This document shows positions 8,580-18,935 of a stretch of DNA of 64,000 bases, piece after piece. The stretch's first letter is position 1; every line of letters begins with the position of its first letter. Made by a program: the position numbers and the translations under genes. The notes below the pieces were generated by a model. The model saw nothing but the letters and a program-made list of their open reading frames with translations. It ran no database searches and was not told where the DNA came from. Location of the stretch: positions 124,001 to 188,000 of the IMG/VR virus record IMGVR_UViG_3300042544_001590. One strand, 5' to 3'.

Positions 8580-8845
8580 TCGAACGTAGTAAGGAAGACA
8601 TTCAAAAGATCGTTGAAAAGTGGAGTTATCTTTTAAATGCACCGTTATCTGGTAACAAAACAGCAATGTTGATTGAATCACAAGAAAAAACATATACGCT
8701 GGATCAGGTAATAGAAAGTATTGAAGATAAAGTGTTTAAACAATATGTTGAAAATTTCAAGCACGACAATGATCATTATAATCCCGATGGATATATTTCG
8801 GTTTTAGTCAAACATCACATTAACAAACACAATATCAATTTATGA
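8576..8845 (+). CDS. small accessory protein
   Basis: GTG start with AAGGAGGT upstream; coupled on both sides. Confidence 0.6.
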   Translation: MIERSKEDIQKIVEKWSYLLNAPLSGNKTAMLIESQEKTYTLDQVIESIEDKVFKQYVENFKHDNDHYNPDGYISVLVKHHINKHNINL

Positions 8846-9291
8846 CAGAAAAAAATGCCAAGAAACCACATTATGTTAATTCCAAGCTGTTCAAACAGCA
8901 ATTGGTGGAATACTATGAGACGGGAGCAAATCTGGACGAATTGGGAGTTCATCTGATGAACATTGCAGAGGGTTTGTCATATAAAATTAACTTTATTAGA
9001 TATTCTCAAAGCTGGAAATCTGAAATGATCGGGGATGCAGTTCTGAAAATGTATGCGGCTCTGGAAAAGAAATTGTATAACATCGAATCAGACTTCAACC
9101 CATTCTCATATTTCAACCGCATTGCTTGGAATGCTTTCTGCAACCGCATCAAGAAGGAGAACGGACAACACAAGGGTCTGGAGGACTACAAGGAGATGGT
9201 GTATATGGAAAGCATGAGTGGGCCAGATTCCATGGGACATGTTTACGTGAAACCGAATTTGGAGGGGGATGAATATGATGACAATGATTAA
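8842..9291 (+). CDS. gp55: late-transcription sigma factor (T4 gp55-like)
   Basis: HYVN...NIAEGLS..NFIRYS..EMIGDA...NPFSYF..IAWNAF.NRIKKE pattern; position between UvsW and gp47. Confidence 0.88.
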   Translation: MTEKNAKKPHYVNSKLFKQQLVEYYETGANLDELGVHLMNIAEGLSYKINFIRYSQSWKSEMIGDAVLKMYAALEKKLYNIESDFNPFSYFNRIAWNAFCNRIKKENGQHKGLEDYKEMVYMESMSGPDSMGHVYVKPNLEGDEYDDND

Positions 9292-10303
9292 GAAACCTAA
9301 AATAGCACTATTTTCAGACCTTCATTTGGGTCTGTATGGAAATTCGACAGAGTGGCATGAAATCGCCTTGAAATGGGCTGATTGGATTGTGTCTGATCTG
9401 AAGAAAAAGAAGATTACGGATATATTTTTCCTTGGTGATTTCTTCCACAATCGTTCGGAGATTTCAGTCCAGACAATACATGTTGCATCAGAATTGATTG
9501 CCAAGTTCAAGGATTTCAACCTCTTGATGGTGATAGGAAACCACGATGCGTTCTACAAGAACCGTTCCGATGTCCATAGCTTGGGATTCCTCAAGGGACA
9601 TGATAACATCACCATCATTGATCAGAACTTGGAATTTGATGCATTTAATAAGAAATTGCTATTTGTCCCATGGAATCACGAATTACCCGAAGGTAAATTT
9701 GACTACATCTTTGGTCATTTTGAAATTCAAACATTCCAAATGAACAATTATAAGGTATGTGATCACGGATTCCAAGTCATGGATTTTCTAGCATCCCGAA
9801 CGACTAATGTTTGGAGCGGTCACTTCCACACCAAGAGCATCAAGAAATACAATGAAGGAACGATTCGATATATTGGCAACACATTCCACCACGATTTCAA
9901 CGATTGTGGAGATGACAAGGGTTATCACATTCTGAATCTGGAAGATGATTCCGTCGAATTTGTGAAAAATACGGTGTCTCCTGAATTTATTAAGATTCCC
10001 CTGTCCAAGATCAAGGACTACAAAGCGGAGGATGTGGAAGGAAACATAATCAAGCTAATCATTGACAAAGATGTGGAAGATGATAAGGTGGAGAAGTTCA
10101 AGATTTACCTGTCCAACTTTGCTCCTTTCCGTCTTACCACGGAATACAACGTGGCAACAAAGACAATTGGGGATGTTGAACAGGTGGATTCCATTGATAT
10201 TGTTGGTATGTTTGACGAATTTTATGAACAACTCAAGCTGGACGACGAACAATTAGTAAGAGTGAAGAAAATTAACGATGAATTGTATGACAAATGTAAG
10301 TAA
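9284..10303 (+). CDS. gp47: recombination endonuclease subunit gp47 (Mre11/SbcD-like)
   Basis: Metallophosphoesterase motifs SDLHLG, GDFFH, GNHD, GHFH. Confidence 0.92.
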   Translation: MIKKPKIALFSDLHLGLYGNSTEWHEIALKWADWIVSDLKKKKITDIFFLGDFFHNRSEISVQTIHVASELIAKFKDFNLLMVIGNHDAFYKNRSDVHSLGFLKGHDNITIIDQNLEFDAFNKKLLFVPWNHELPEGKFDYIFGHFEIQTFQMNNYKVCDHGFQVMDFLASRTTNVWSGHFHTKSIKKYNEGTIRYIGNTFHHDFNDCGDDKGYHILNLEDDSVEFVKNTVSPEFIKIPLSKIKDYKAEDVEGNIIKLIIDKDVEDDKVEKFKIYLSNFAPFRLTTEYNVATKTIGDVEQVDSIDIVGMFDEFYEQLKLDDEQLVRVKKINDELYDKCK

Positions 10304-10541
10304 TCCCCTGTTAAGAGCTTTCAAACATACAATAAAAATATCGGAACGCGAAAGAGATGTTCCCATGGAGGAATATATACACAAATATATATTAATGCAT
10401 GGAAGTTGTCTCATAATGGATAGAATCTTGAAAAGAGTTGGCGATAAGGATTCATTAACATTTGATGTTACATATATTTTCAATGATAATCCAACAGATG
10501 ATAAAATTGTCGAAGCTTTGATAAAAATAAACGCATTATAA
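10287..10541 (+). CDS. small accessory protein
   Basis: Starts at the ATG inside junction copy 1. Confidence 0.55.
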   Translation: MTNVSNPLLRAFKHTIKISERERDVPMEEYIHKYILMHGSCLIMDRILKRVGDKDSLTFDVTYIFNDNPTDDKIVEALIKINAL

Positions 10542-10554
10542 TGAAACGAATTGT

Positions 10555-10791
10555 ATGAAAAGTGTAAGTGATTTTGATTTGAAAAAGGTTTTTGTCGAAG
10601 AGGTCACTGAGCGTATTGGTCAACATGTTTTGGCAAGTAAGGTCAGAGATGCTACGATAGAAGATATTGAAAAAGAATTGGAAAATCATAAAAATGGTAA
10701 ATGTGGACATTCTATTGTTGAAGACACATATGGGTGGTTGTATGATTTTAGGGGGTGTGCTATTTGTGGAAAGGGACTTGGAACTGTATGA
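10555..10791 (+). CDS. small Cys/His (Zn-binding-like) accessory protein
   Basis: CGH...CAICGKG; starts at the ATG inside junction copy 2. Confidence 0.6.
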   Translation: MKSVSDFDLKKVFVEEVTERIGQHVLASKVRDATIEDIEKELENHKNGKCGHSIVEDTYGWLYDFRGCAICGKGLGTV

Positions 10792-11708
10792 AAAAAATAA
10801 TTTATAAAAAATTAAAAGGTCAAAATTTCCTTAGCATTGGCAACGATCAGATTGTGATTGATTTTCAATCTGGTTTCAATCTGATCACTGCTAAGAATAT
10901 CGACAACCCTGATCGCCAAAACGGGGGAGGCAAGTCAACATTGGCGGAACTTTTCTATTTCGCCCAATTTGGTAAAACCATCCGTGAAATTAAAAAGGAT
11001 TTCATCATCAACAATATCACCAAAGGAAAAGGTGCTATTGAATTGACGTTTGACGTAGAGACTGATAATGACACTCAGACATACACAATCAAGCGACAAC
11101 TCAAACCAAGCTCTGTAACTCTCTTAAAAGGAGATGAAGATATCACTAAGGATTCAATTGCCAATACTGATAAATTCATCTGTGATCTGATCGGTTCCAA
11201 TCCTGTGATCTGCCGTAGTTGTGATATTCTATCTCTTTCCGATAACATCCCGTTCATGGCGAAGAAACCAGAGGAGAAGCGCAAGTTTATCAATGATATT
11301 TTCTCTTTGGAAGTCTTTGGTAAGATGAGTAATGAATTGAAGAATCTGATTCGTGATAATAAAGGGGAGATGAACATTTCCACTGCAAGATTGGAAGAAC
11401 TTAACCACACTCTGGAAACGCTGAATGATCAGCAAGCGGATTATCTGAAGAAAGTCCAAGAACGGGAAGCAATCCTCGAACAAAAGCGTAAGGAGATCCA
11501 AGAGAAGATCGACGAAACGGAGGAAAAGATTGCTAAAATATCCATAACGGATGTCTCAACAATACAATTGGAGCAAGAGAAGTATCATGAAGCTTGGAGA
11601 AAATTGGATGGGAAGATCGGTCATGTGAACGATGCGATTTCATCCAAGGAGACTTTGAGAAAGTTGAAGGTGAAAGAAATTGAACAAATTGAGAAAGTAA
11701 CAAAATGA
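10788..11708 (+). CDS. gp46: gp46 (Rad50/SbcC-like) N-terminal half
   Basis: GQNFLSIG, Walker A QNGGGKS, Q-loop region then coiled coil; ends EKVTK-stop. Confidence 0.9.
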   Translation: MKKIIYKKLKGQNFLSIGNDQIVIDFQSGFNLITAKNIDNPDRQNGGGKSTLAELFYFAQFGKTIREIKKDFIINNITKGKGAIELTFDVETDNDTQTYTIKRQLKPSSVTLLKGDEDITKDSIANTDKFICDLIGSNPVICRSCDILSLSDNIPFMAKKPEEKRKFINDIFSLEVFGKMSNELKNLIRDNKGEMNISTARLEELNHTLETLNDQQADYLKKVQEREAILEQKRKEIQEKIDETEEKIAKISITDVSTIQLEQEKYHEAWRKLDGKIGHVNDAISSKETLRKLKVKEIEQIEKVTK

Positions 11709-12031
11709 ACACGGAATGTGAAAATTTATCTGGAAGTATAGATATTGGAGAATACCAGAAAATGTTGGCAAGTGTCCCCAAAGCAGCTAAAGAATGTGGG
11801 ATGATTCAACATGAGGATGGATTGTATAAAATGTGGGTTGATTGTAAAGTGATTGATAAATTCACCAAAAACAAATTGTTTGGGGGTAGAAAATATTATT
11901 TTGTTCTCAATATCATGGGAATAACCAAAGAAATTCAAGTGGATGAAAATAATTACTACAATCAATCAGAGATGAATAGAATACATATGTATTCTGAAGA
12001 CCGTAAAACATGGTTCCCAACCAGACAATAA
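11705..12031 (+). CDS. inserted ORF splitting gp46; paralogue of 18603..18935
   Basis: 61 of 72 C-terminal residues identical to the 18603 protein; many DNA differences are synonymous. Confidence 0.8.
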   Translation: MNTECENLSGSIDIGEYQKMLASVPKAAKECGMIQHEDGLYKMWVDCKVIDKFTKNKLFGGRKYYFVLNIMGITKEIQVDENNYYNQSEMNRIHMYSEDRKTWFPTRQ

Positions 12032-12033
12032 AA

Positions 12034-12906
12034 ATGATTAAATGCGACAAATGCCTCCAAGATATTCCCCATACTCATGTGGAACATCTGGAGAAGATGA
12101 AAGAACAATATCAATCGGAATTGGATGATATTGTCAAGGAAATTGATGAATTGAAAGAACAAAAATCTCAATTCCATTCGAAAAAAGAAAAGGTTCAAGC
12201 TAAGGTAGCTGAGTTTCAGGATCAAATCAATGAATCGAAAGTCACCAAACAAAAATTGGAAGGTCTGGAAAACAGTCTCAAGCAATACAAAGATTCTTTG
12301 AACAACTTGAAGCTGGAAGAATTACCTAAACCAAATTTTGAGGAAAGTATTCAAAATACTTGGGTGAGACAAAATACTGAGAATGATAATTTCCGAATGC
12401 TTAAACAGAAATCAGATGATTATGAAATCTGTAAGTTCGTTCTTGGTGAAGAAGGTGTTCGTAGCTTTGTGGTGAAGAGACTTCTTTCCATGATGAACGC
12501 AAGCATTCAGCAATACATCAACGATCTTGGTATGTCCATCCGTTGTAAATTTGACGAATACTTTGATGAGCAGCTTTCCAATGACAAAGGTAAGGAGATT
12601 TCCTACTGGAACTTGAGCGGTGGTGAACGTAGAACAGTTGACCTCGCGTGTGCGTGGGCGTTCAAGGACTTGAAAAGGAAGATTTCGGGAGTGTCATCCA
12701 ATGTGGAATTTTTTGATGAATACCTCGATTCCACCCTAGATTCCACAGGAATTGATAAGTTGATCGAACAAATCAAACAACGAATTGATAGATTTGATCT
12801 TTCTGTTTATGTGATTTCCCATAGAACAGAAACCGCCAAACATGTTACAGGATCAGTAATTGAACTCGCTAAAGAAGGTGGAGTTACTAGGAGAATTTAT
12901 AATTGA
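12034..12906 (+). CDS. gp46: gp46 (Rad50/SbcC-like) C-terminal half
   Basis: Begins MIK-CDKC (zinc hook), coiled coil, LSGGE signature, FFDE Walker B, VISH H-loop. Confidence 0.9.
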   Translation: MIKCDKCLQDIPHTHVEHLEKMKEQYQSELDDIVKEIDELKEQKSQFHSKKEKVQAKVAEFQDQINESKVTKQKLEGLENSLKQYKDSLNNLKLEELPKPNFEESIQNTWVRQNTENDNFRMLKQKSDDYEICKFVLGEEGVRSFVVKRLLSMMNASIQQYINDLGMSIRCKFDEYFDEQLSNDKGKEISYWNLSGGERRTVDLACAWAFKDLKRKISGVSSNVEFFDEYLDSTLDSTGIDKLIEQIKQRIDRFDLSVYVISHRTETAKHVTGSVIELAKEGGVTRRIYN

Positions 12907-12930
12907 CAAATGGAAAAACATGAATAAATC
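12903..12930 (+). promoter_or_regulatory. TTGACA-N16-TAAATC promoter, 5 nt before ATG
   Basis: Direct motif match. Confidence 0.55.
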
Positions 12931-12935
12931 TCTTC

Positions 12936-14129
12936 ATGTTTCAAAAGTCTCCGTTTCCATCTCCTTTTGCTAAGAATCCCTATGCTGTAAAAAACACCAC
13001 CCAAGAACCCCCTAAAAAGGGCAACACTTATTTAAACTTCGGAGCCGATAGAGGGGGTTGTGGACAATGGCGCATAGGTTGGCCTGAATTACATATCAAT
13101 ATGTGTGGATTGGGGGATTCTTCCACCATTACCAAGATGGTTCTCAACAAGGATTGGTATCGGGATGTGAAAACCATCAAGCTCCAACGCCAATGTTCGA
13201 CTCAACAGAAAGAATTCTTTAAATTTCTCAAGAGTATCCAACCAGAATGCGGTTTCAAAATCATCTATGAAGTGGATGATGTGGTATTCCACGAAGAGAT
13301 TCCCGATTACAATTCCTACAAACACGCATTTGCTTCCGATGAGATTCGCCAGAACTGCGTGGACATGATGAACATGGCAGATGAGGTGACGGTGACATGT
13401 AAATACATGCGCGATCTTTTCATTGAGAAAACAGGACAACAAAAGACTTCCGTGATTCCCAACTTCCCTCCCGAATGGTGGATTGGTTCTCATTACAATT
13501 ATGGGAAGGTTATCCAGAACTTTGATAGGAACAAGAAAAAGCCGCGCATCCTCTATTCAGGATCGGGAGCGCACTTTGATGTGAAGAATGTCACGGGACA
13601 GCAAGATGATTTTTCCCATGTCCTGAAATTCATCATCGATAACCGTCATAAATATCAGTTCATTTTCATTGGTGCTTACCCACCTCCCCTGCATCCATAT
13701 ATCGAAAGTAAGGAAATAGAATTTCATCCATGGCAATCCCTGATGGATTATCCGAAGTTCATTGCTTCTTTGAATCCCCAATTGCTTCTTGCACCCCTGA
13801 AGGATATTCCGTTCAACAGGTCAAAGTCTGATATCAAATATATTGAGGGAGCTTGTTTGGGTATCCCCTGTATGGTTCAGGATATGGTGACGTATCAGGA
13901 TGCTCCCGATTTCCTAAAATTCACGGATTCCACCGATTTGGAACAGAAAGTGGAGACAATTCTGAATTGGAAGAACCGTTTCAAGTATTACAAGCTGGTT
14001 CCCGAGTTGAGAAAGCTTGGGGAAAGCAGATTCCTTGAAAGACCGGAGAATATCGGAGCGTTTATGGAAGCCCTGAATACACCATTCGGTGATCCTTCTC
14101 GCAGATTCATGAAATATTGGAATGATTAA
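12936..14129 (+). CDS. glycosyltransferase (GT-B-like, phage type)
   Basis: IIYEVDD, ADEVTVT, LAPLKDIPFNRSKSDIKYIEG patterns. Confidence 0.75.
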   Translation: MFQKSPFPSPFAKNPYAVKNTTQEPPKKGNTYLNFGADRGGCGQWRIGWPELHINMCGLGDSSTITKMVLNKDWYRDVKTIKLQRQCSTQQKEFFKFLKSIQPECGFKIIYEVDDVVFHEEIPDYNSYKHAFASDEIRQNCVDMMNMADEVTVTCKYMRDLFIEKTGQQKTSVIPNFPPEWWIGSHYNYGKVIQNFDRNKKKPRILYSGSGAHFDVKNVTGQQDDFSHVLKFIIDNRHKYQFIFIGAYPPPLHPYIESKEIEFHPWQSLMDYPKFIASLNPQLLLAPLKDIPFNRSKSDIKYIEGACLGIPCMVQDMVTYQDAPDFLKFTDSTDLEQKVETILNWKNRFKYYKLVPELRKLGESRFLERPENIGAFMEALNTPFGDPSRRFMKYWND

Positions 14130-14407
14130 TTCTTACCAAATTGGGAATATTGAGCGAGCGTTGGGCGGAGCCTTTCAAACATACCTTTTAAGTTTTCAAA
14201 GCTATTCATATTCGAAGGATTATTGAAAAAGGCTTTTTTATTGTTTTGGTAAAAATTGATAGTTCCTTTTAGATAATTTTCAATATACGAACAAAGTTCA
14301 TGCGCCTTTGCCTTGACTTTTTCTGTCTGTGGGTCATAATCATCGTAGGATGATTCCATATCAAGATTTTCGTAAATCATACTCAAGTCTTTGAAATAAT
14401 TATCCAT
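14126..14407 (-). CDS. hypothetical late protein
   Basis: TAAATA-N5-ATG; N-terminus YFKDLSMIYEN. Confidence 0.65.
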   Translation of the reverse strand: MDNYFKDLSMIYENLDMESSYDDYDPQTEKVKAKAHELCSYIENYLKGTINFYQNNKKAFFNNPSNMNSFENLKGMFERLRPTLAQYSQFGKN

Positions 14408-18418: not shown

Positions 18419-18606
18419 TAACACAATTAAATCCCACGATACCAGTAGTCACCCCAAAAGGGAAGGGTTACGCACATCTGGTCATAGATTATTCCCAAGA
18501 ACATGATTTATATTGGGTTTGTTTTATAAATGATACGAAAGAATGCTGGACATTTGGGAATTCTGAGATAAGAATAGATGACAACATAACATTACAGAGA
18601 AAATGA
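18415..18606 (+). CDS. small conserved phage protein
   Basis: QLNP.IP..TPKG.G.AH..IDY..EH.L.WVCF pattern recurrent in phages. Confidence 0.7.
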   Translation: MITQLNPTIPVVTPKGKGYAHLVIDYSQEHDLYWVCFINDTKECWTFGNSEIRIDDNITLQRK

Positions 18607-18935
18607 AAATTGAAACGAATTATCAGTGCATTTCTGGAGTATGTGATGCAAGTCATTTTGATCACTATTCCAAAGACTCAATCCAATTGGCACAAGAACG
18701 AGGACATTGGCCATACGAAGATGGTCTATATAAAATGTGGGTTGATTGTAAAGTGATTGATAAATTCACTAAGAACAAATTGTTCGGGGGTAGAAAATAT
18801 TATTTCGTTTTGAATCTTATGGGAACGACGAAAGAACTTCAAGTCAATCAAAGCAATTACTATAATCAATCTGAGGTGAATGAGATACATGTGTATTCCG
18901 AAGACGGTAAAACATGGTTCCCAACCAGAATATAA
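18603..18935 (+). CDS. hypothetical protein, paralogue of the gp46 insert
   Basis: Shared 72-aa C-terminal core with 11705..12031. Confidence 0.8.
   Translation: MKIETNYQCISGVCDASHFDHYSKDSIQLAQERGHWPYEDGLYKMWVDCKVIDKFTKNKLFGGRKYYFVLNLMGTTKELQVNQSNYYNQSEVNEIHVYSEDGKTWFPTRI

What the first reader, a model, noticed from the sequence alone, without database searches (positions are those of the whole stretch)
10788..12906. gp46 (Rad50/SbcC) split at the first cysteine codon of its zinc hook by an intact inserted gene
Seen: the N-half (Walker A plus coiled coil) ends GTA ACA AAA TG|A. The C-half starts ATG ATT AAA TG|C GAC AAA TGC (CDKC). Removing 11706-12042 (337 nt) restores ...EKVTK-CDKC-LQDIP as one ORF of about 593 aa. 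AAATG is duplicated at both ends. The left copy simultaneously makes the stop of the N-half and the ATG of the inserted ORF, and the C-half has its own ATG two nt after the insert's stop. Established: Rad50/gp46 folds as an antiparallel coiled coil with the CXXC hook at the apex, and gp46/47 is needed for T4 recombination-dependent replication. Inference: a naturally two-piece Rad50 broken at the one tolerable position. A less likely alternative is rejoining by splicing or ribosomal bypass (take-off AAA + stop, landing AAA).
Basis: partly seen in the sequence, partly recalled or inferred. Interest (0 to 1): 0.85.

Follow-up and report, generated by a model that had tools for sequence, protein, structure and literature searches.

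The report
Two-piece phage Rad50 with swappable gene slot
In this uncultured T4-like phage and many relatives, the DNA-repair ATPase Rad50 (gp46) is encoded as two separate proteins broken just before its zinc hook, both halves stay under strong selection, and the gap holds a different small gene in different phages.

Summary
The gp46 N-half (10788-11708) stops at a TGA that overlaps the ATG of an intact 108-aa ORF (11705-12031). The C-half (12034-12906) starts M-I-K and runs straight into the CDKC hook.

The 108-aa gene did not cause the split. The same break occurs in about half of the close relatives and in about 39 protein clusters of stand-alone C-halves, some only 57% identical to the window's. 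The gap holds at least nine unrelated contents, including a GNAT acetyltransferase, several ORFans and a 42-nt near-empty spacer.

Both halves keep 56 of 57 family-invariant residues. Their dN/dS is about 0.08, the same as for intact alleles. In a confident model of an intact relative, the break falls in the disordered apex loop.

I found no intron, intein, bypass signals, inverted repeats or second gp46 copy. The AAATG "duplication" comes from the stop/start overlap and the Lys-Cys codons, not from insertion.

Best reading: a functional, non-covalently assembled two-piece Rad50 whose break has become a translationally coupled slot for accessory genes, spread among phages by recombination. I found no published natural precedent. 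It is a new variant of the T4-type "genes in pieces".

The parts
9269..10303 (+). gp47 (Mre11/SbcD-like nuclease), partner of gp46
   Evidence: Pfam Metallophos_2 E=3e-5, 24.4 bits, below the 27-bit cutoff. Orthologues in relatives carry PF00149 Metallophos. It sits between a gp55-like ORF (8842-9291) and gp46, in the T4 gene order.
10278..10791 (+). Two small ORFs (87 aa at 10278-10541; 78 aa at 10555-10791) between gp47 and gp46. The second ends in an ATGA overlap with the gp46 start.
   Evidence: No Pfam or PHROG match. In relatives L043 and L047 this same interval holds a homologue of the window's cassette ORF.
10788..11708 (+). gp46/Rad50 N-half, 306 aa: ATPase N-lobe with Walker A plus the ascending coiled-coil helix. 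It ends ...EQIEKVTK, then TGA.
   Evidence: It aligns to residues 1-304 of an intact 596-aa relative. dN/dS among split alleles is 0.077.
11703..11708 (+). Left junction AAATGA: last Lys codon, N-half stop TGA and cassette ATG overlapping
   Evidence: The same AAATGA type occurs in L108, L109 and L112. Most other split alleles have ATATGA.
11705..12031 (+). Cassette ORF, 108 aa, small beta-rich protein of unknown function. It is the current occupant of the slot.
   Evidence: No Pfam, PHROG or phage-GenBank match. There are 6 close homologues and 19 remote ones. Family dN/dS is 0.04-0.34. AF2 pLDDT is 66 with no significant PDB fold match. There is weak fn3-like sequence similarity.
12029..12042 (+). 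Right junction: cassette stop TAA, two nt, then ATG ATT AAA, the C-half start conserved across split alleles
   Evidence: The ATGATTAAATG motif carries stops in both other frames, so cassettes in any frame terminate at the C-half start.
12034..12906 (+). gp46/Rad50 C-half, 290 aa: MIK, CDKC zinc hook, descending coiled-coil helix, then the ATPase C-lobe (LSGGE signature, Walker B FFDE, D-loop, H-loop SHR)
   Evidence: It aligns to residues 308-594 of the intact relative. dN/dS is 0.087. An alternative in-frame ATG at 12010 is not conserved.
12043..12054 (+). CDKC zinc-hook codons, wholly on the C-half
   Evidence: Both Cys columns are invariant in 24 intact relatives (C310 and C313) and in 11 stand-alone C-halves.
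18603..18935 (+). Paralogue of the cassette ORF (110 aa), lying downstream of DNA polymerase gp43
   Evidence: The 3' two-thirds are 77-93% identical in DNA to 11705-12031, while the 5' third is unrelated.

Best explanation
Shown:
- gp46, the phage Rad50/SbcC ATPase, is encoded as two genes. The break lies in the short unstructured loop between the end of the ascending coiled-coil helix and the first cysteine of the CxxC zinc hook.
- The break is an old allele shared by many related uncultured T4-like phages.
- The gap between the halves is a variable slot. The window's 108-aa ORF is one occupant.
- Both halves are under purifying selection.

Inferred:
- The N-half (Walker A lobe plus one helix) and the C-half (intact hook, the other helix, signature/Walker B lobe) are translated separately. 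The gene chain N-half, cassette, C-half is tightly coupled by stop/start overlaps.
- The two halves assemble without a covalent link, through the antiparallel coiled coil and the two-lobe ATPase head. They then work with gp47 like an ordinary Mre11-Rad50 complex.
- Hook-mediated dimerisation is made by the C-halves alone, because each C-half carries a complete CxxC.
- The break has been co-opted as a permissive intergenic slot inside an essential early operon, where unrelated small accessory genes are gained and exchanged.
- The junction with its flanks moves between phage backbones by homologous recombination.
For: 1. Same break, many contents.
- In IMG/VR relatives with 72-90% identical N-halves, about half are split at the same point and half are intact at 596 aa.
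- Slot contents: the 108/110-aa family (window, L001, L048, L044-46); a 102-aa ORF (L004, L006, L009-13, L028, L030, L116); a 156-aa GNAT acetyltransferase (L008, Pfam E=6e-9); a ~70-aa in-frame extension (L003); 89-aa (L106/107), 69-aa (L108-113), 92-aa (L117) and 77-aa (L118) ORFs; and a 42-nt spacer (L015).

2. Census. About 39 of 62 protein clusters found with the C-half are stand-alone proteins of 288-302 aa that start with a Met 3-5 residues before CxxC. Their identity to the window falls as low as 57%. One cluster is seen on 59 contigs of up to 203 kb.

3. Selection. dN/dS is 0.077 (N-halves) and 0.087 (C-halves) among split alleles, at dS of about 1. Intact alleles give 0.105 and 0.099. 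The window's halves keep 56 of 57 columns invariant across 24 intact relatives, including Walker A, signature, Walker B, D-loop, H-loop and both hook Cys.

4. Position. In the AF2 model of an intact relative (pLDDT 85) the helices span 174-300 and 320-443, and the loop between them has pLDDT below 50 at 303-309. The window's halves align to 1-304 and 308-594.

5. Coupling. There are ATGA or near-adjacent stop/start arrangements at both junctions in every allele. No promoter or terminator signal exceeds chance.

6. Recombination. Split and intact alleles are intermixed on the N-half tree, needing at least 2 changes even on starred branches. All split alleles nevertheless share the ...EQI[ED]KV ending, against ...DKFSSVEDGIQ in intact ones. 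Divergent split backbones (53-58% overall) are 67-73% identical to the window in the 60 residues on each side of the junction. An equally divergent intact relative gives 30-48%.

7. No second gp46 in the window or the source contig.

Established knowledge, from my own memory: Rad50 ATPase heads are routinely reconstituted in vitro from separately expressed N and C segments (Hopfner et al. 2000, Cell 101:789).
Against: - There is no biochemical evidence that the halves associate or that the complex is active.
- No multimer structure prediction could be run.
- The C-half has no recognisable Shine-Dalgarno sequence. That is uninformative here, because most genes of this phage lack one.
- The non-covalent apex could weaken coiled-coil registry or hook function. 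Selection data show that the halves are useful, not that they do exactly what intact gp46 does.
- The single-origin-plus-recombination scenario rests on short shared junction signatures and on identity contrasts, not on a formal recombination test.
Confidence: 0.85

Rival explanations
1. A recent insertion: the 108-aa gene is a mobile element that jumped into an intact gp46, duplicated AAATG as its target site, and thereby created the split.
For: AAATG is present at both borders, 337 nt apart. A 65%-identical paralogue lies elsewhere in the same genome. Family members occupy different positions in relatives.
Against: - The same break is found with at least eight other gap contents and with a near-empty gap.
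- Most split alleles have ATATGA on the left, so they carry no repeat.
- AAATG occurs 146 times in the window. Here it is forced by the Lys codon plus ATGA overlap on the left and by the Lys-Cys codons on the right.
- The borders have no inverted repeats, and the ORF has no transposase, integrase or endonuclease domain.
- The intact allele reads DKFSSVEDGIQ-CDKC, not EKVTK-CDKC.
Confidence: 0.04
2. The halves are rejoined into one polypeptide or one mRNA by ribosomal bypassing (T4 gene 60 type), a self-splicing intron, or protein trans-splicing.
For: - In the window the take-off codon AAA plus a stop is matched by a possible landing codon AAA just before TGC. The same match exists in L108 and L112.
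- In L015 the gap between the Ile codons is 48 nt, close to the 50 nt of gene 60.
- A true split intein does exist elsewhere in gp46 of some relatives.
Against: - The gap is 337 nt here and 218-477 nt in most alleles. It contains genes under purifying selection.
- Take-off and landing codons do not match in the ATATGA-type alleles, L106 or L109.
- Every split allele keeps its own ATG 3-5 codons before the hook, which rejoining would not require.
- RNA structure at the junctions is no better than in shuffled sequence: z = -0.04 and +0.25, and +1.98 for L015.
- No Rfam intron or any other family matches. The gap contents are mutually unrelated, so there is no conserved ribozyme core.
- Neither half has a Hint/intein domain, and the halves add up to the intact length with only 3 residues unaccounted for.
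Confidence: 0.03
3. gp46 is a decaying pseudogene in these phages. The function has been lost or is supplied by the host SbcCD.
For: An essential single-chain enzyme interrupted by a stop codon is the usual signature of inactivation.
Against: - dN/dS is about 0.08 in both halves over dS of about 1, equal to intact alleles.
- Among split alleles that have diverged to 57% identity there are no further stops or frameshifts.
- 56 of 57 invariant residues are kept.
- The start codon and the stop/start coupling are conserved.
Confidence: 0.02
4. Assembly or sequencing artefact (a chimeric contig or a frameshift error).
For: The source is a metagenomic contig.
Against: The arrangement is identical in independent samples and assemblers (L001, L048). 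Dozens of related contigs show the same break.
Confidence: 0.01

Closest known systems
Split DNA polymerase gene 43 (43A/43B) of T4-related Aeromonas phages 25 and 44RR (reviewed in PMC2988022)
   Same: It is an essential replication/recombination enzyme of T4-like phages, contiguous in relatives and encoded as two cistrons. The gap content differs between related phages (an untranslated spacer in one, a seg-like gene in another). The review therefore suggests that the inserted gene may have invaded a gene that was already split. According to the review, the pieces co-purify and are active.
   Different: It is a different protein and fold. Here the break is at the apex of a coiled coil, next to a metal-binding hook. 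The gap contents are far more diverse (at least nine), and in the window the occupant is not a homing endonuclease. The split and intact alleles also coexist as a polymorphism within one clade.
Genes in pieces made by homing endonuclease insertion: nrdA-mobE of phage Aeh1, and topoisomerase genes 39/60 with mobA in T4 (PMC2988022)
   Same: A contiguous gene is cut within a functionally critical region into two polypeptides that must reassemble. The downstream genes are translationally coupled.
   Different: The intervening gene here has no endonuclease domain. HNH-like/DUF7487 genes are found only next to gp46, downstream of the C-half, and only in some relatives.
Laboratory two-chain Rad50 catalytic domains (N and C segments co-expressed; Hopfner et al. 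2000, from my own memory) and hook-replacement studies (PMC6969161)
   Same: They show that Rad50 N and C lobes can assemble without a covalent connection through the coiled coil. They also show that the hook acts as a dimerisation module (title and abstract of PMC6969161).
   Different: Those are engineered truncations lacking most of the coiled coil and the hook. Here full-length arms and an intact hook are kept, and the arrangement is natural and under selection.
Split inteins in ATPase P-loops, including atypically split inteins with a very short N-fragment
   Same: In relatives L047 and L109-111, gp46 is also cut at Walker A (GK|C...HN|S). There is a 28-residue intein N-piece, an intervening 362-aa ORF, and an intein C-piece fused to the rest of gp46. 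This is another way of encoding this same protein in pieces.
   Different: The hook break in the window has no intein residues on either side, so it cannot be healed by trans-splicing.

Membership tests
Rad50 / SbcC / T4 gp46 (SMC-like ABC ATPase) | Walker A (P-loop) in an N-terminal lobe | tested here: met
   NGGGKST in the N-half. Pfam AAA_23 E=3e-13. The invariant N45, G48 and K49 are kept.
Rad50 / SbcC / T4 gp46 (SMC-like ABC ATPase) | Signature motif, Walker B, D-loop and H-loop in a C-terminal lobe | tested here: met
   LSGGE, FFDE, D-loop and SHR are all present in the C-half and invariant across the family.
Rad50 / SbcC / T4 gp46 (SMC-like ABC ATPase) | Long antiparallel coiled coil with a CxxC zinc hook at its apex | tested here: met
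   CDKC lies at C-half residues 4-7. In the AF2 model of an intact relative, helices 174-300 and 320-443 flank a loop that holds C310 and C313. The window's halves align collinearly with that relative.
Rad50 / SbcC / T4 gp46 (SMC-like ABC ATPase) | Single polypeptide carrying both lobes | tested here: not met
   Stop at 11706-11708, with a separate ATG at 12034. This is the feature that makes it a variant.
Rad50 / SbcC / T4 gp46 (SMC-like ABC ATPase) | Adjacent Mre11/SbcD/gp47 nuclease partner | tested here: met
   The ORF at 9269-10303 matches Metallophos_2 weakly (24.4 bits against a 27-bit cutoff). Orthologues in relatives carry PF00149. The gene order gp55-gp47-gp46 matches T4.
Rad50 / SbcC / T4 gp46 (SMC-like ABC ATPase) | Zn-dependent dimerisation, ATPase activity, stimulation of Mre11 nuclease | not testable with these tools
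   Needs biochemistry.
T4-type genes in pieces created by a homing endonuclease | Gene contiguous in relatives and split here, with both pieces retained | tested here: met
   Relatives have intact 596-aa alleles. dN/dS is about 0.08 in both pieces.
T4-type genes in pieces created by a homing endonuclease | Intervening gene is a homing endonuclease (GIY-YIG, HNH, etc.) | tested here: not met
   Neither the window's cassette nor any other slot occupant has an endonuclease domain. HNH-like genes lie downstream of gp46 only in some relatives.
T4-type genes in pieces created by a homing endonuclease | Pieces reassemble into an active enzyme | not testable with these tools
   Inferred from selection only.
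Intein / split intein | Hint-domain blocks flanking the break, with a nucleophile at +1 | tested here: not met
   Neither half has Hint or intein matches. The halves cover 1-304 and 308-594 of the intact protein, leaving no room for intein residues. The +1 residue is Cys, but that alone does not define an intein.
Group I/II intron | Conserved ribozyme core between the exons | tested here: not met
   No Rfam match at E<=1 other than two chance snoRNA hits. The gap contents are unrelated between alleles and one is only 42 nt. No structure exceeds shuffles.
Programmed translational bypass (T4 gene 60 type) | Matched take-off and landing codons, a stop after take-off, a gap of about 50 nt, and a take-off stem-loop | tested here: not met
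   The gap is 337 nt here. The codons match in the window, L108 and L112, but not in the ATATGA-type alleles, L106 or L109. There is no stem-loop.
Transposable element with target-site duplication | Terminal inverted repeats, a transposase, and a consistent target-site duplication | tested here: not met
   There are no border inverted repeats and no transposase. The AAATG repeat is absent from most alleles with the same break.

The most novel reading that the evidence does not exclude
The break is positively useful, not merely tolerated. Opening gp46 at the hook loop creates an expression slot that is translationally chained to an essential early recombination gene, and phages use it to carry and exchange small accessory genes, possibly host-takeover or counter-defence genes. 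On this reading the split junction behaves as a semi-mobile allele, copied with its flanks into divergent phage backbones by gene conversion. The HNH-like endonuclease genes found directly downstream of gp46 in several split lineages may drive that copying. A further possibility is that a Rad50 arm with a nick at the apex has altered mechanics, such as easier ring opening, that the phage exploits.
Probability: 0.25. Interest if true: 0.8.

Novelty: new variant of a known kind. Interest (0 to 1): 0.68.

Why it matters
**For Mre11-Rad50 research.** This is a natural experiment on a long-discussed point: whether the covalent continuity of the coiled-coil arm through the zinc hook is needed for function. 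Here evolution has kept, under strong selection and over large divergence, a Rad50 whose ascending helix ends free, 3-5 residues before the hook. The hook itself belongs entirely to the other chain. The intact and split alleles coexist in close relatives, which provides matched pairs for biochemistry.

**For phage genomics.** This adds a fourth core enzyme to the T4-type "genes in pieces", after topoisomerase, NrdA and DNA polymerase. It shows more clearly than those cases that a break inside an essential gene can become a hot spot for accessory-gene turnover. It also warns annotators that roughly 300-aa "SbcC" fragments in such phages are not truncations.

Tried and rejected
- **DNA search against GenBank phages.** No match. 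tblastn of the cassette ORF also found nothing. The phage is only about 30% identical to cultured phages in DNA polymerase, so no cultured reference exists.
- **Two-feature GenBank hits.** Alishewanella and Ochrobactrum phages showed two annotated features under the match. These proved to be adjacent gp47 and an intact gp46, not splits. Listeria phage A511 gp115 is also intact.
- **Function of the 108-aa cassette.**
  - Pfam and PHROGs gave nothing.
  - A profile search found only 19 small relatives, plus weak matches inside fn3 repeats of giant proteins.
  - The AF2 model is mediocre (pLDDT 66) and its best PDB fold matches have E>=0.09.
  - The function stays unknown.
- **Frameshift origin.** This idea predicts a minimal allele with the N-half stop and C-half start overlapping directly (ATATGATTAAATG...). 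No such sequence exists in IMG/VR, so the origin remains open.
- **L015 spacer as a relic of the original hook codons.** The alignment to intact alleles was ambiguous, so I make no claim.
- **Literature.** Four searches for a natural hook-split Rad50/SbcC/gp46 found none. Barfoot et al. 2015 on the T4 gp46 coiled coil is not held in the library.
Full report
**1. Observation**

- An ORF starting at 10788 encodes 306 residues with an AAA_23/SMC_N match and the Walker A motif NGGGKST. It ends GTA ACA AAA TGA at 11708.
- The ATG at 11705 overlaps that stop and opens a 108-codon ORF ending TAA at 12031.
- Two bases later, at 12034, ATG ATT AAA TGC GAC AAA TGC opens a 290-codon ORF. It carries the CDKC hook at residues 4-7 and then the signature, Walker B, D-loop and H-loop motifs.
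- The upstream neighbour (9269-10303) is the gp47/Mre11-like phosphoesterase.
- A gp55-like ORF precedes gp47, and a polymerase and a RecA-like gene follow further downstream. The context is therefore a T4-like replication/recombination module.
- The window is positions 124001-188000 of a 207-kb IMG/VR contig.
- The arrangement is identical in a contig from another sample (L001) and 99% identical in an independent assembly (L048), so it is not an assembly error.

**2. The break is shared; the insert is not**

Scanning IMG/VR with the N-half returned 37 loci. Among relatives 72-90% identical, about half have one 596-aa gp46 reading ...KEIDKFSSVEDGIQ-CDKC. The other half stop after 305-306 residues (...EQIEKVI or ...EKVTK) and restart with M-I-K-CDKC.

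What lies between the halves differs from contig to contig:

| Slot content | Loci |
|---|---|
| 108-aa ORF (window's form) | window, L001, L048 |
| Full-length 110-aa member of the same family | L044-46 |
| 102-aa ORF | ten or more contigs |
| 156-aa GNAT acetyltransferase | L008 |
| ~70-codon extension in frame with the C-half | L003 |
| 89-aa ORF | L106/107 |
| 69-aa ORF | L108-L113 |
| 92-aa ORF in a 477-nt gap | L117 |
| 77-aa ORF | L118 |
| 42-nt spacer | L015 |

A search of 5.8 billion proteins with the C-half gave further evidence. That search's length window excludes intact proteins. It found about 39 clusters of stand-alone proteins of 288-302 aa that begin with a Met 3-5 residues before CxxC (MIKC, MSVKC, MSVIKC, MNIHC, MKVKC). 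Their identity to the window falls as low as 57%, and one cluster is seen on 59 contigs.

More distant IMG/VR relatives (39-55% identity) are all intact.

The break is therefore an allele of long standing in one clade, and the window's ORF is only its present occupant.

**3. The AAATG repeat**

The repeat exists, at 11703 and 12040, but it does not mark an insertion.

- It occurs 146 times on this strand of the window, and a third copy lies at 12032.
- On the left it is the Lys codon plus the ATGA stop/start overlap. On the right it is the Lys-Cys codons.
- Most alleles with the same break have ATATGA on the left and therefore no repeat.
- There are no border inverted repeats, and no mobility gene lies in the gap.

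**4. Both halves are functional genes**

- Pairwise dN/dS among split alleles is 0.077 for N-halves and 0.087 for C-halves, at a median dS of about 1. Intact alleles give 0.105 and 0.099.
- The window's halves keep 56 of the 57 columns that are invariant in 24 intact relatives. The exception is G35A.
- The window has no other gp46 homologue. Both scans found a single gp46 locus in the 207-kb contig.

**5. Where the break falls**

An AlphaFold2 model of a naturally intact relative (L056, 596 aa, mean pLDDT 85) shows the following layout:

- N-lobe
- Ascending helix, residues 174-300
- Non-helical stretch, residues 301-319, holding C310 and C313, with pLDDT below 50 at 303-309
- Descending helix, residues 320-443
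- C-lobe

The window's N-half aligns to residues 1-304 and the C-half to 308-594. The chain is thus cut in the flexible loop just before the hook, and the whole CxxC stays on the C-half.

From established knowledge, one Zn is bound by the CxxC motifs of two Rad50 chains, and the N and C lobes of Rad50 can be reconstituted from separate chains. It follows that hook dimerisation would be made by two C-halves, and that the N-half would be held by the coiled coil and the head. That assembly is inferred, not shown.

**6. Expression**

- In every allele the N-half stop overlaps the next ATG (ATGA).
- The motif ATGATTAAATG at the C-half start carries stops in both other frames. Cassettes in any frame therefore end at or within a few bases of the C-half ATG.
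- Promoter-like and terminator-like sites do not exceed chance across 8700-14300.
- Shine-Dalgarno motifs are rare in this phage generally.

A chain of termination-reinitiation events (N-half, cassette, C-half) is the likely mode of expression. This is an inference.

**7. Rejoining mechanisms rejected**

- No Rfam family matches. The gap contents are mutually unrelated, and one is only 42 nt.
- RNA folding at the junctions is no better than in shuffled sequence.
- Neither half has a Hint domain, and no residues are left over for an intein.
- Bypassing would need a 337-nt hop over a translated gene. The take-off and landing codons match in some alleles but not in others, and all alleles keep their own ATG.

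**8. How the allele spreads**

- On an N-half tree, split and intact alleles are intermixed. One split allele is sister to an intact one with 95/97 support.
- All split alleles nevertheless share the ...EQI[ED]KV ending.
- Two split backbones only 53-58% identical to the window overall are 67-73% identical in the 60 residues on each side of the junction. An equally distant intact relative is 30-48% identical there.
- This mosaic pattern suggests a single origin followed by transfer of the junction and its flanks by homologous recombination.
- HNH-like/DUF7487 genes lie directly downstream of the C-half in L003, L106 and L112/113 and could promote such conversion. The window has none; its next gene is glycosyltransferase-like.

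**9. The cassette ORF**

- It belongs to a tiny family: 6 close homologues and 19 remote ones among 1.84 billion representatives.
- The family is under purifying selection, with dN/dS of 0.04-0.34.
- Members sit in the hook slot (window, L044-46), between gp47 and an intact gp46 (L043), just after gp47 (L047), and after gp43 in the window itself (18603-18935).
- The window's copy is chimeric. Its 3' two-thirds are 77-93% identical in DNA to the paralogue, while its 5' third is unrelated.
- The model is beta-rich but of modest confidence, and it has no significant fold match. Weak sequence similarity to fn3 repeats is the only hint.
- The function is unknown. The diversity of slot occupants argues that they are accessory genes rather than gp46 cofactors.

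**10. Comparison with known systems, and novelty**

The closest precedents are the T4-type genes in pieces reviewed in PMC2988022.

- Gene 43A/43B of Aeromonas phages is the nearest. There the gap content also differs between relatives, and an endonuclease gene may have invaded an already split gene.
- The others are nrdA-mobE and genes 39/60-mobA.

Four literature searches found no report of a naturally hook-split Rad50/SbcC/gp46. I therefore rate this a new variant of a known kind. It is surprising for Rad50 mechanics and useful as a natural matched pair of split and intact alleles, but it is mechanistically in line with what is known of gene splitting in T4-like phages.

Noticed in passing
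L047:4009-7348 and L109:820-4370: In some relatives gp46 is also cut at Walker A by what looks like an atypically split intein. A 77-aa ORF ends ...NGIGK followed by a 28-residue piece that starts with Cys. A 362-aa ORF of unknown function follows. Next comes an ORF that begins with an Intein_splicing match, ends its intein part in ...SHN, and resumes with Ser and the rest of gp46. L109-111 carry both this intein split and the hook split, so gp46 is encoded there in three coding pieces with two intervening genes.
   Followed up: partly
window 18603-18935: A 110-aa paralogue of the cassette ORF lies just downstream of DNA polymerase gp43. Only the 3' two-thirds of the two copies are similar (77-93% DNA identity). 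This points to a recombination breakpoint inside the gene.
   Followed up: partly
L003:6017-7030; L106:4402-5550; L112:2233-3273: A 337-382-aa gene lies directly downstream of the gp46 C-half in several split-allele relatives. It has multiple HTH motifs, Pfam DUF7487 and PHROG matches to HNH endonuclease, and is likely a free-standing homing endonuclease. In L003 its C-terminal residues resemble the C-terminus of gp46. The window has no such gene.
   Followed up: partly
L003:4915-5991: In this relative the slot sequence is in frame with the C-half. The result is a 358-codon ORF made of a ~70-residue extension followed by MIK-CDKC. The C-half may therefore be made with or without an N-terminal extension in front of the hook.
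   Followed up: no
L015:4911-4970: This is the near-empty allele. Its 42-nt spacer contains a 13-codon mini-ORF, is flanked by similar ~10-nt stretches (ATGATTCAAT and ATGATCAAAT), and holds an out-of-frame TGC GAT GGC TGT. It may be a relic of duplicated hook codons or the footprint of a lost cassette. The alignment was ambiguous.
   Followed up: partly
window 12010-12033: The C-half reading frame is open from an ATG at 12010, which overlaps the end of the cassette ORF by 22 nt. That start would add eight residues (MVPNQTIK). It is not conserved in relatives.
   Followed up: yes
window 10555-10791: The 78-aa ORF immediately upstream of gp46 has two Cys pairs (..GKCGHS.. and ..CAICGKG..), suggesting a small zinc-ribbon protein. 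It ends in an ATGA overlap with the gp46 start. It has no family match.
   Followed up: no
L078:2496-4451 and L098: One distant relative has a 652-aa gp46, about 55 residues longer than usual. In another, the open frame upstream of the hook is only 197 codons, so the N-terminal part may be interrupted there too.
   Followed up: no
window, whole: Few genes have a Shine-Dalgarno-like motif upstream (13 of 47 long plus-strand ORFs, on a loose definition). The best cultured-phage matches to the DNA polymerase are only about 30% identical (Pelagibacter and Synechococcus myophages). This is a deep-branching uncultured T4-like lineage with an unknown host.
   Followed up: partly
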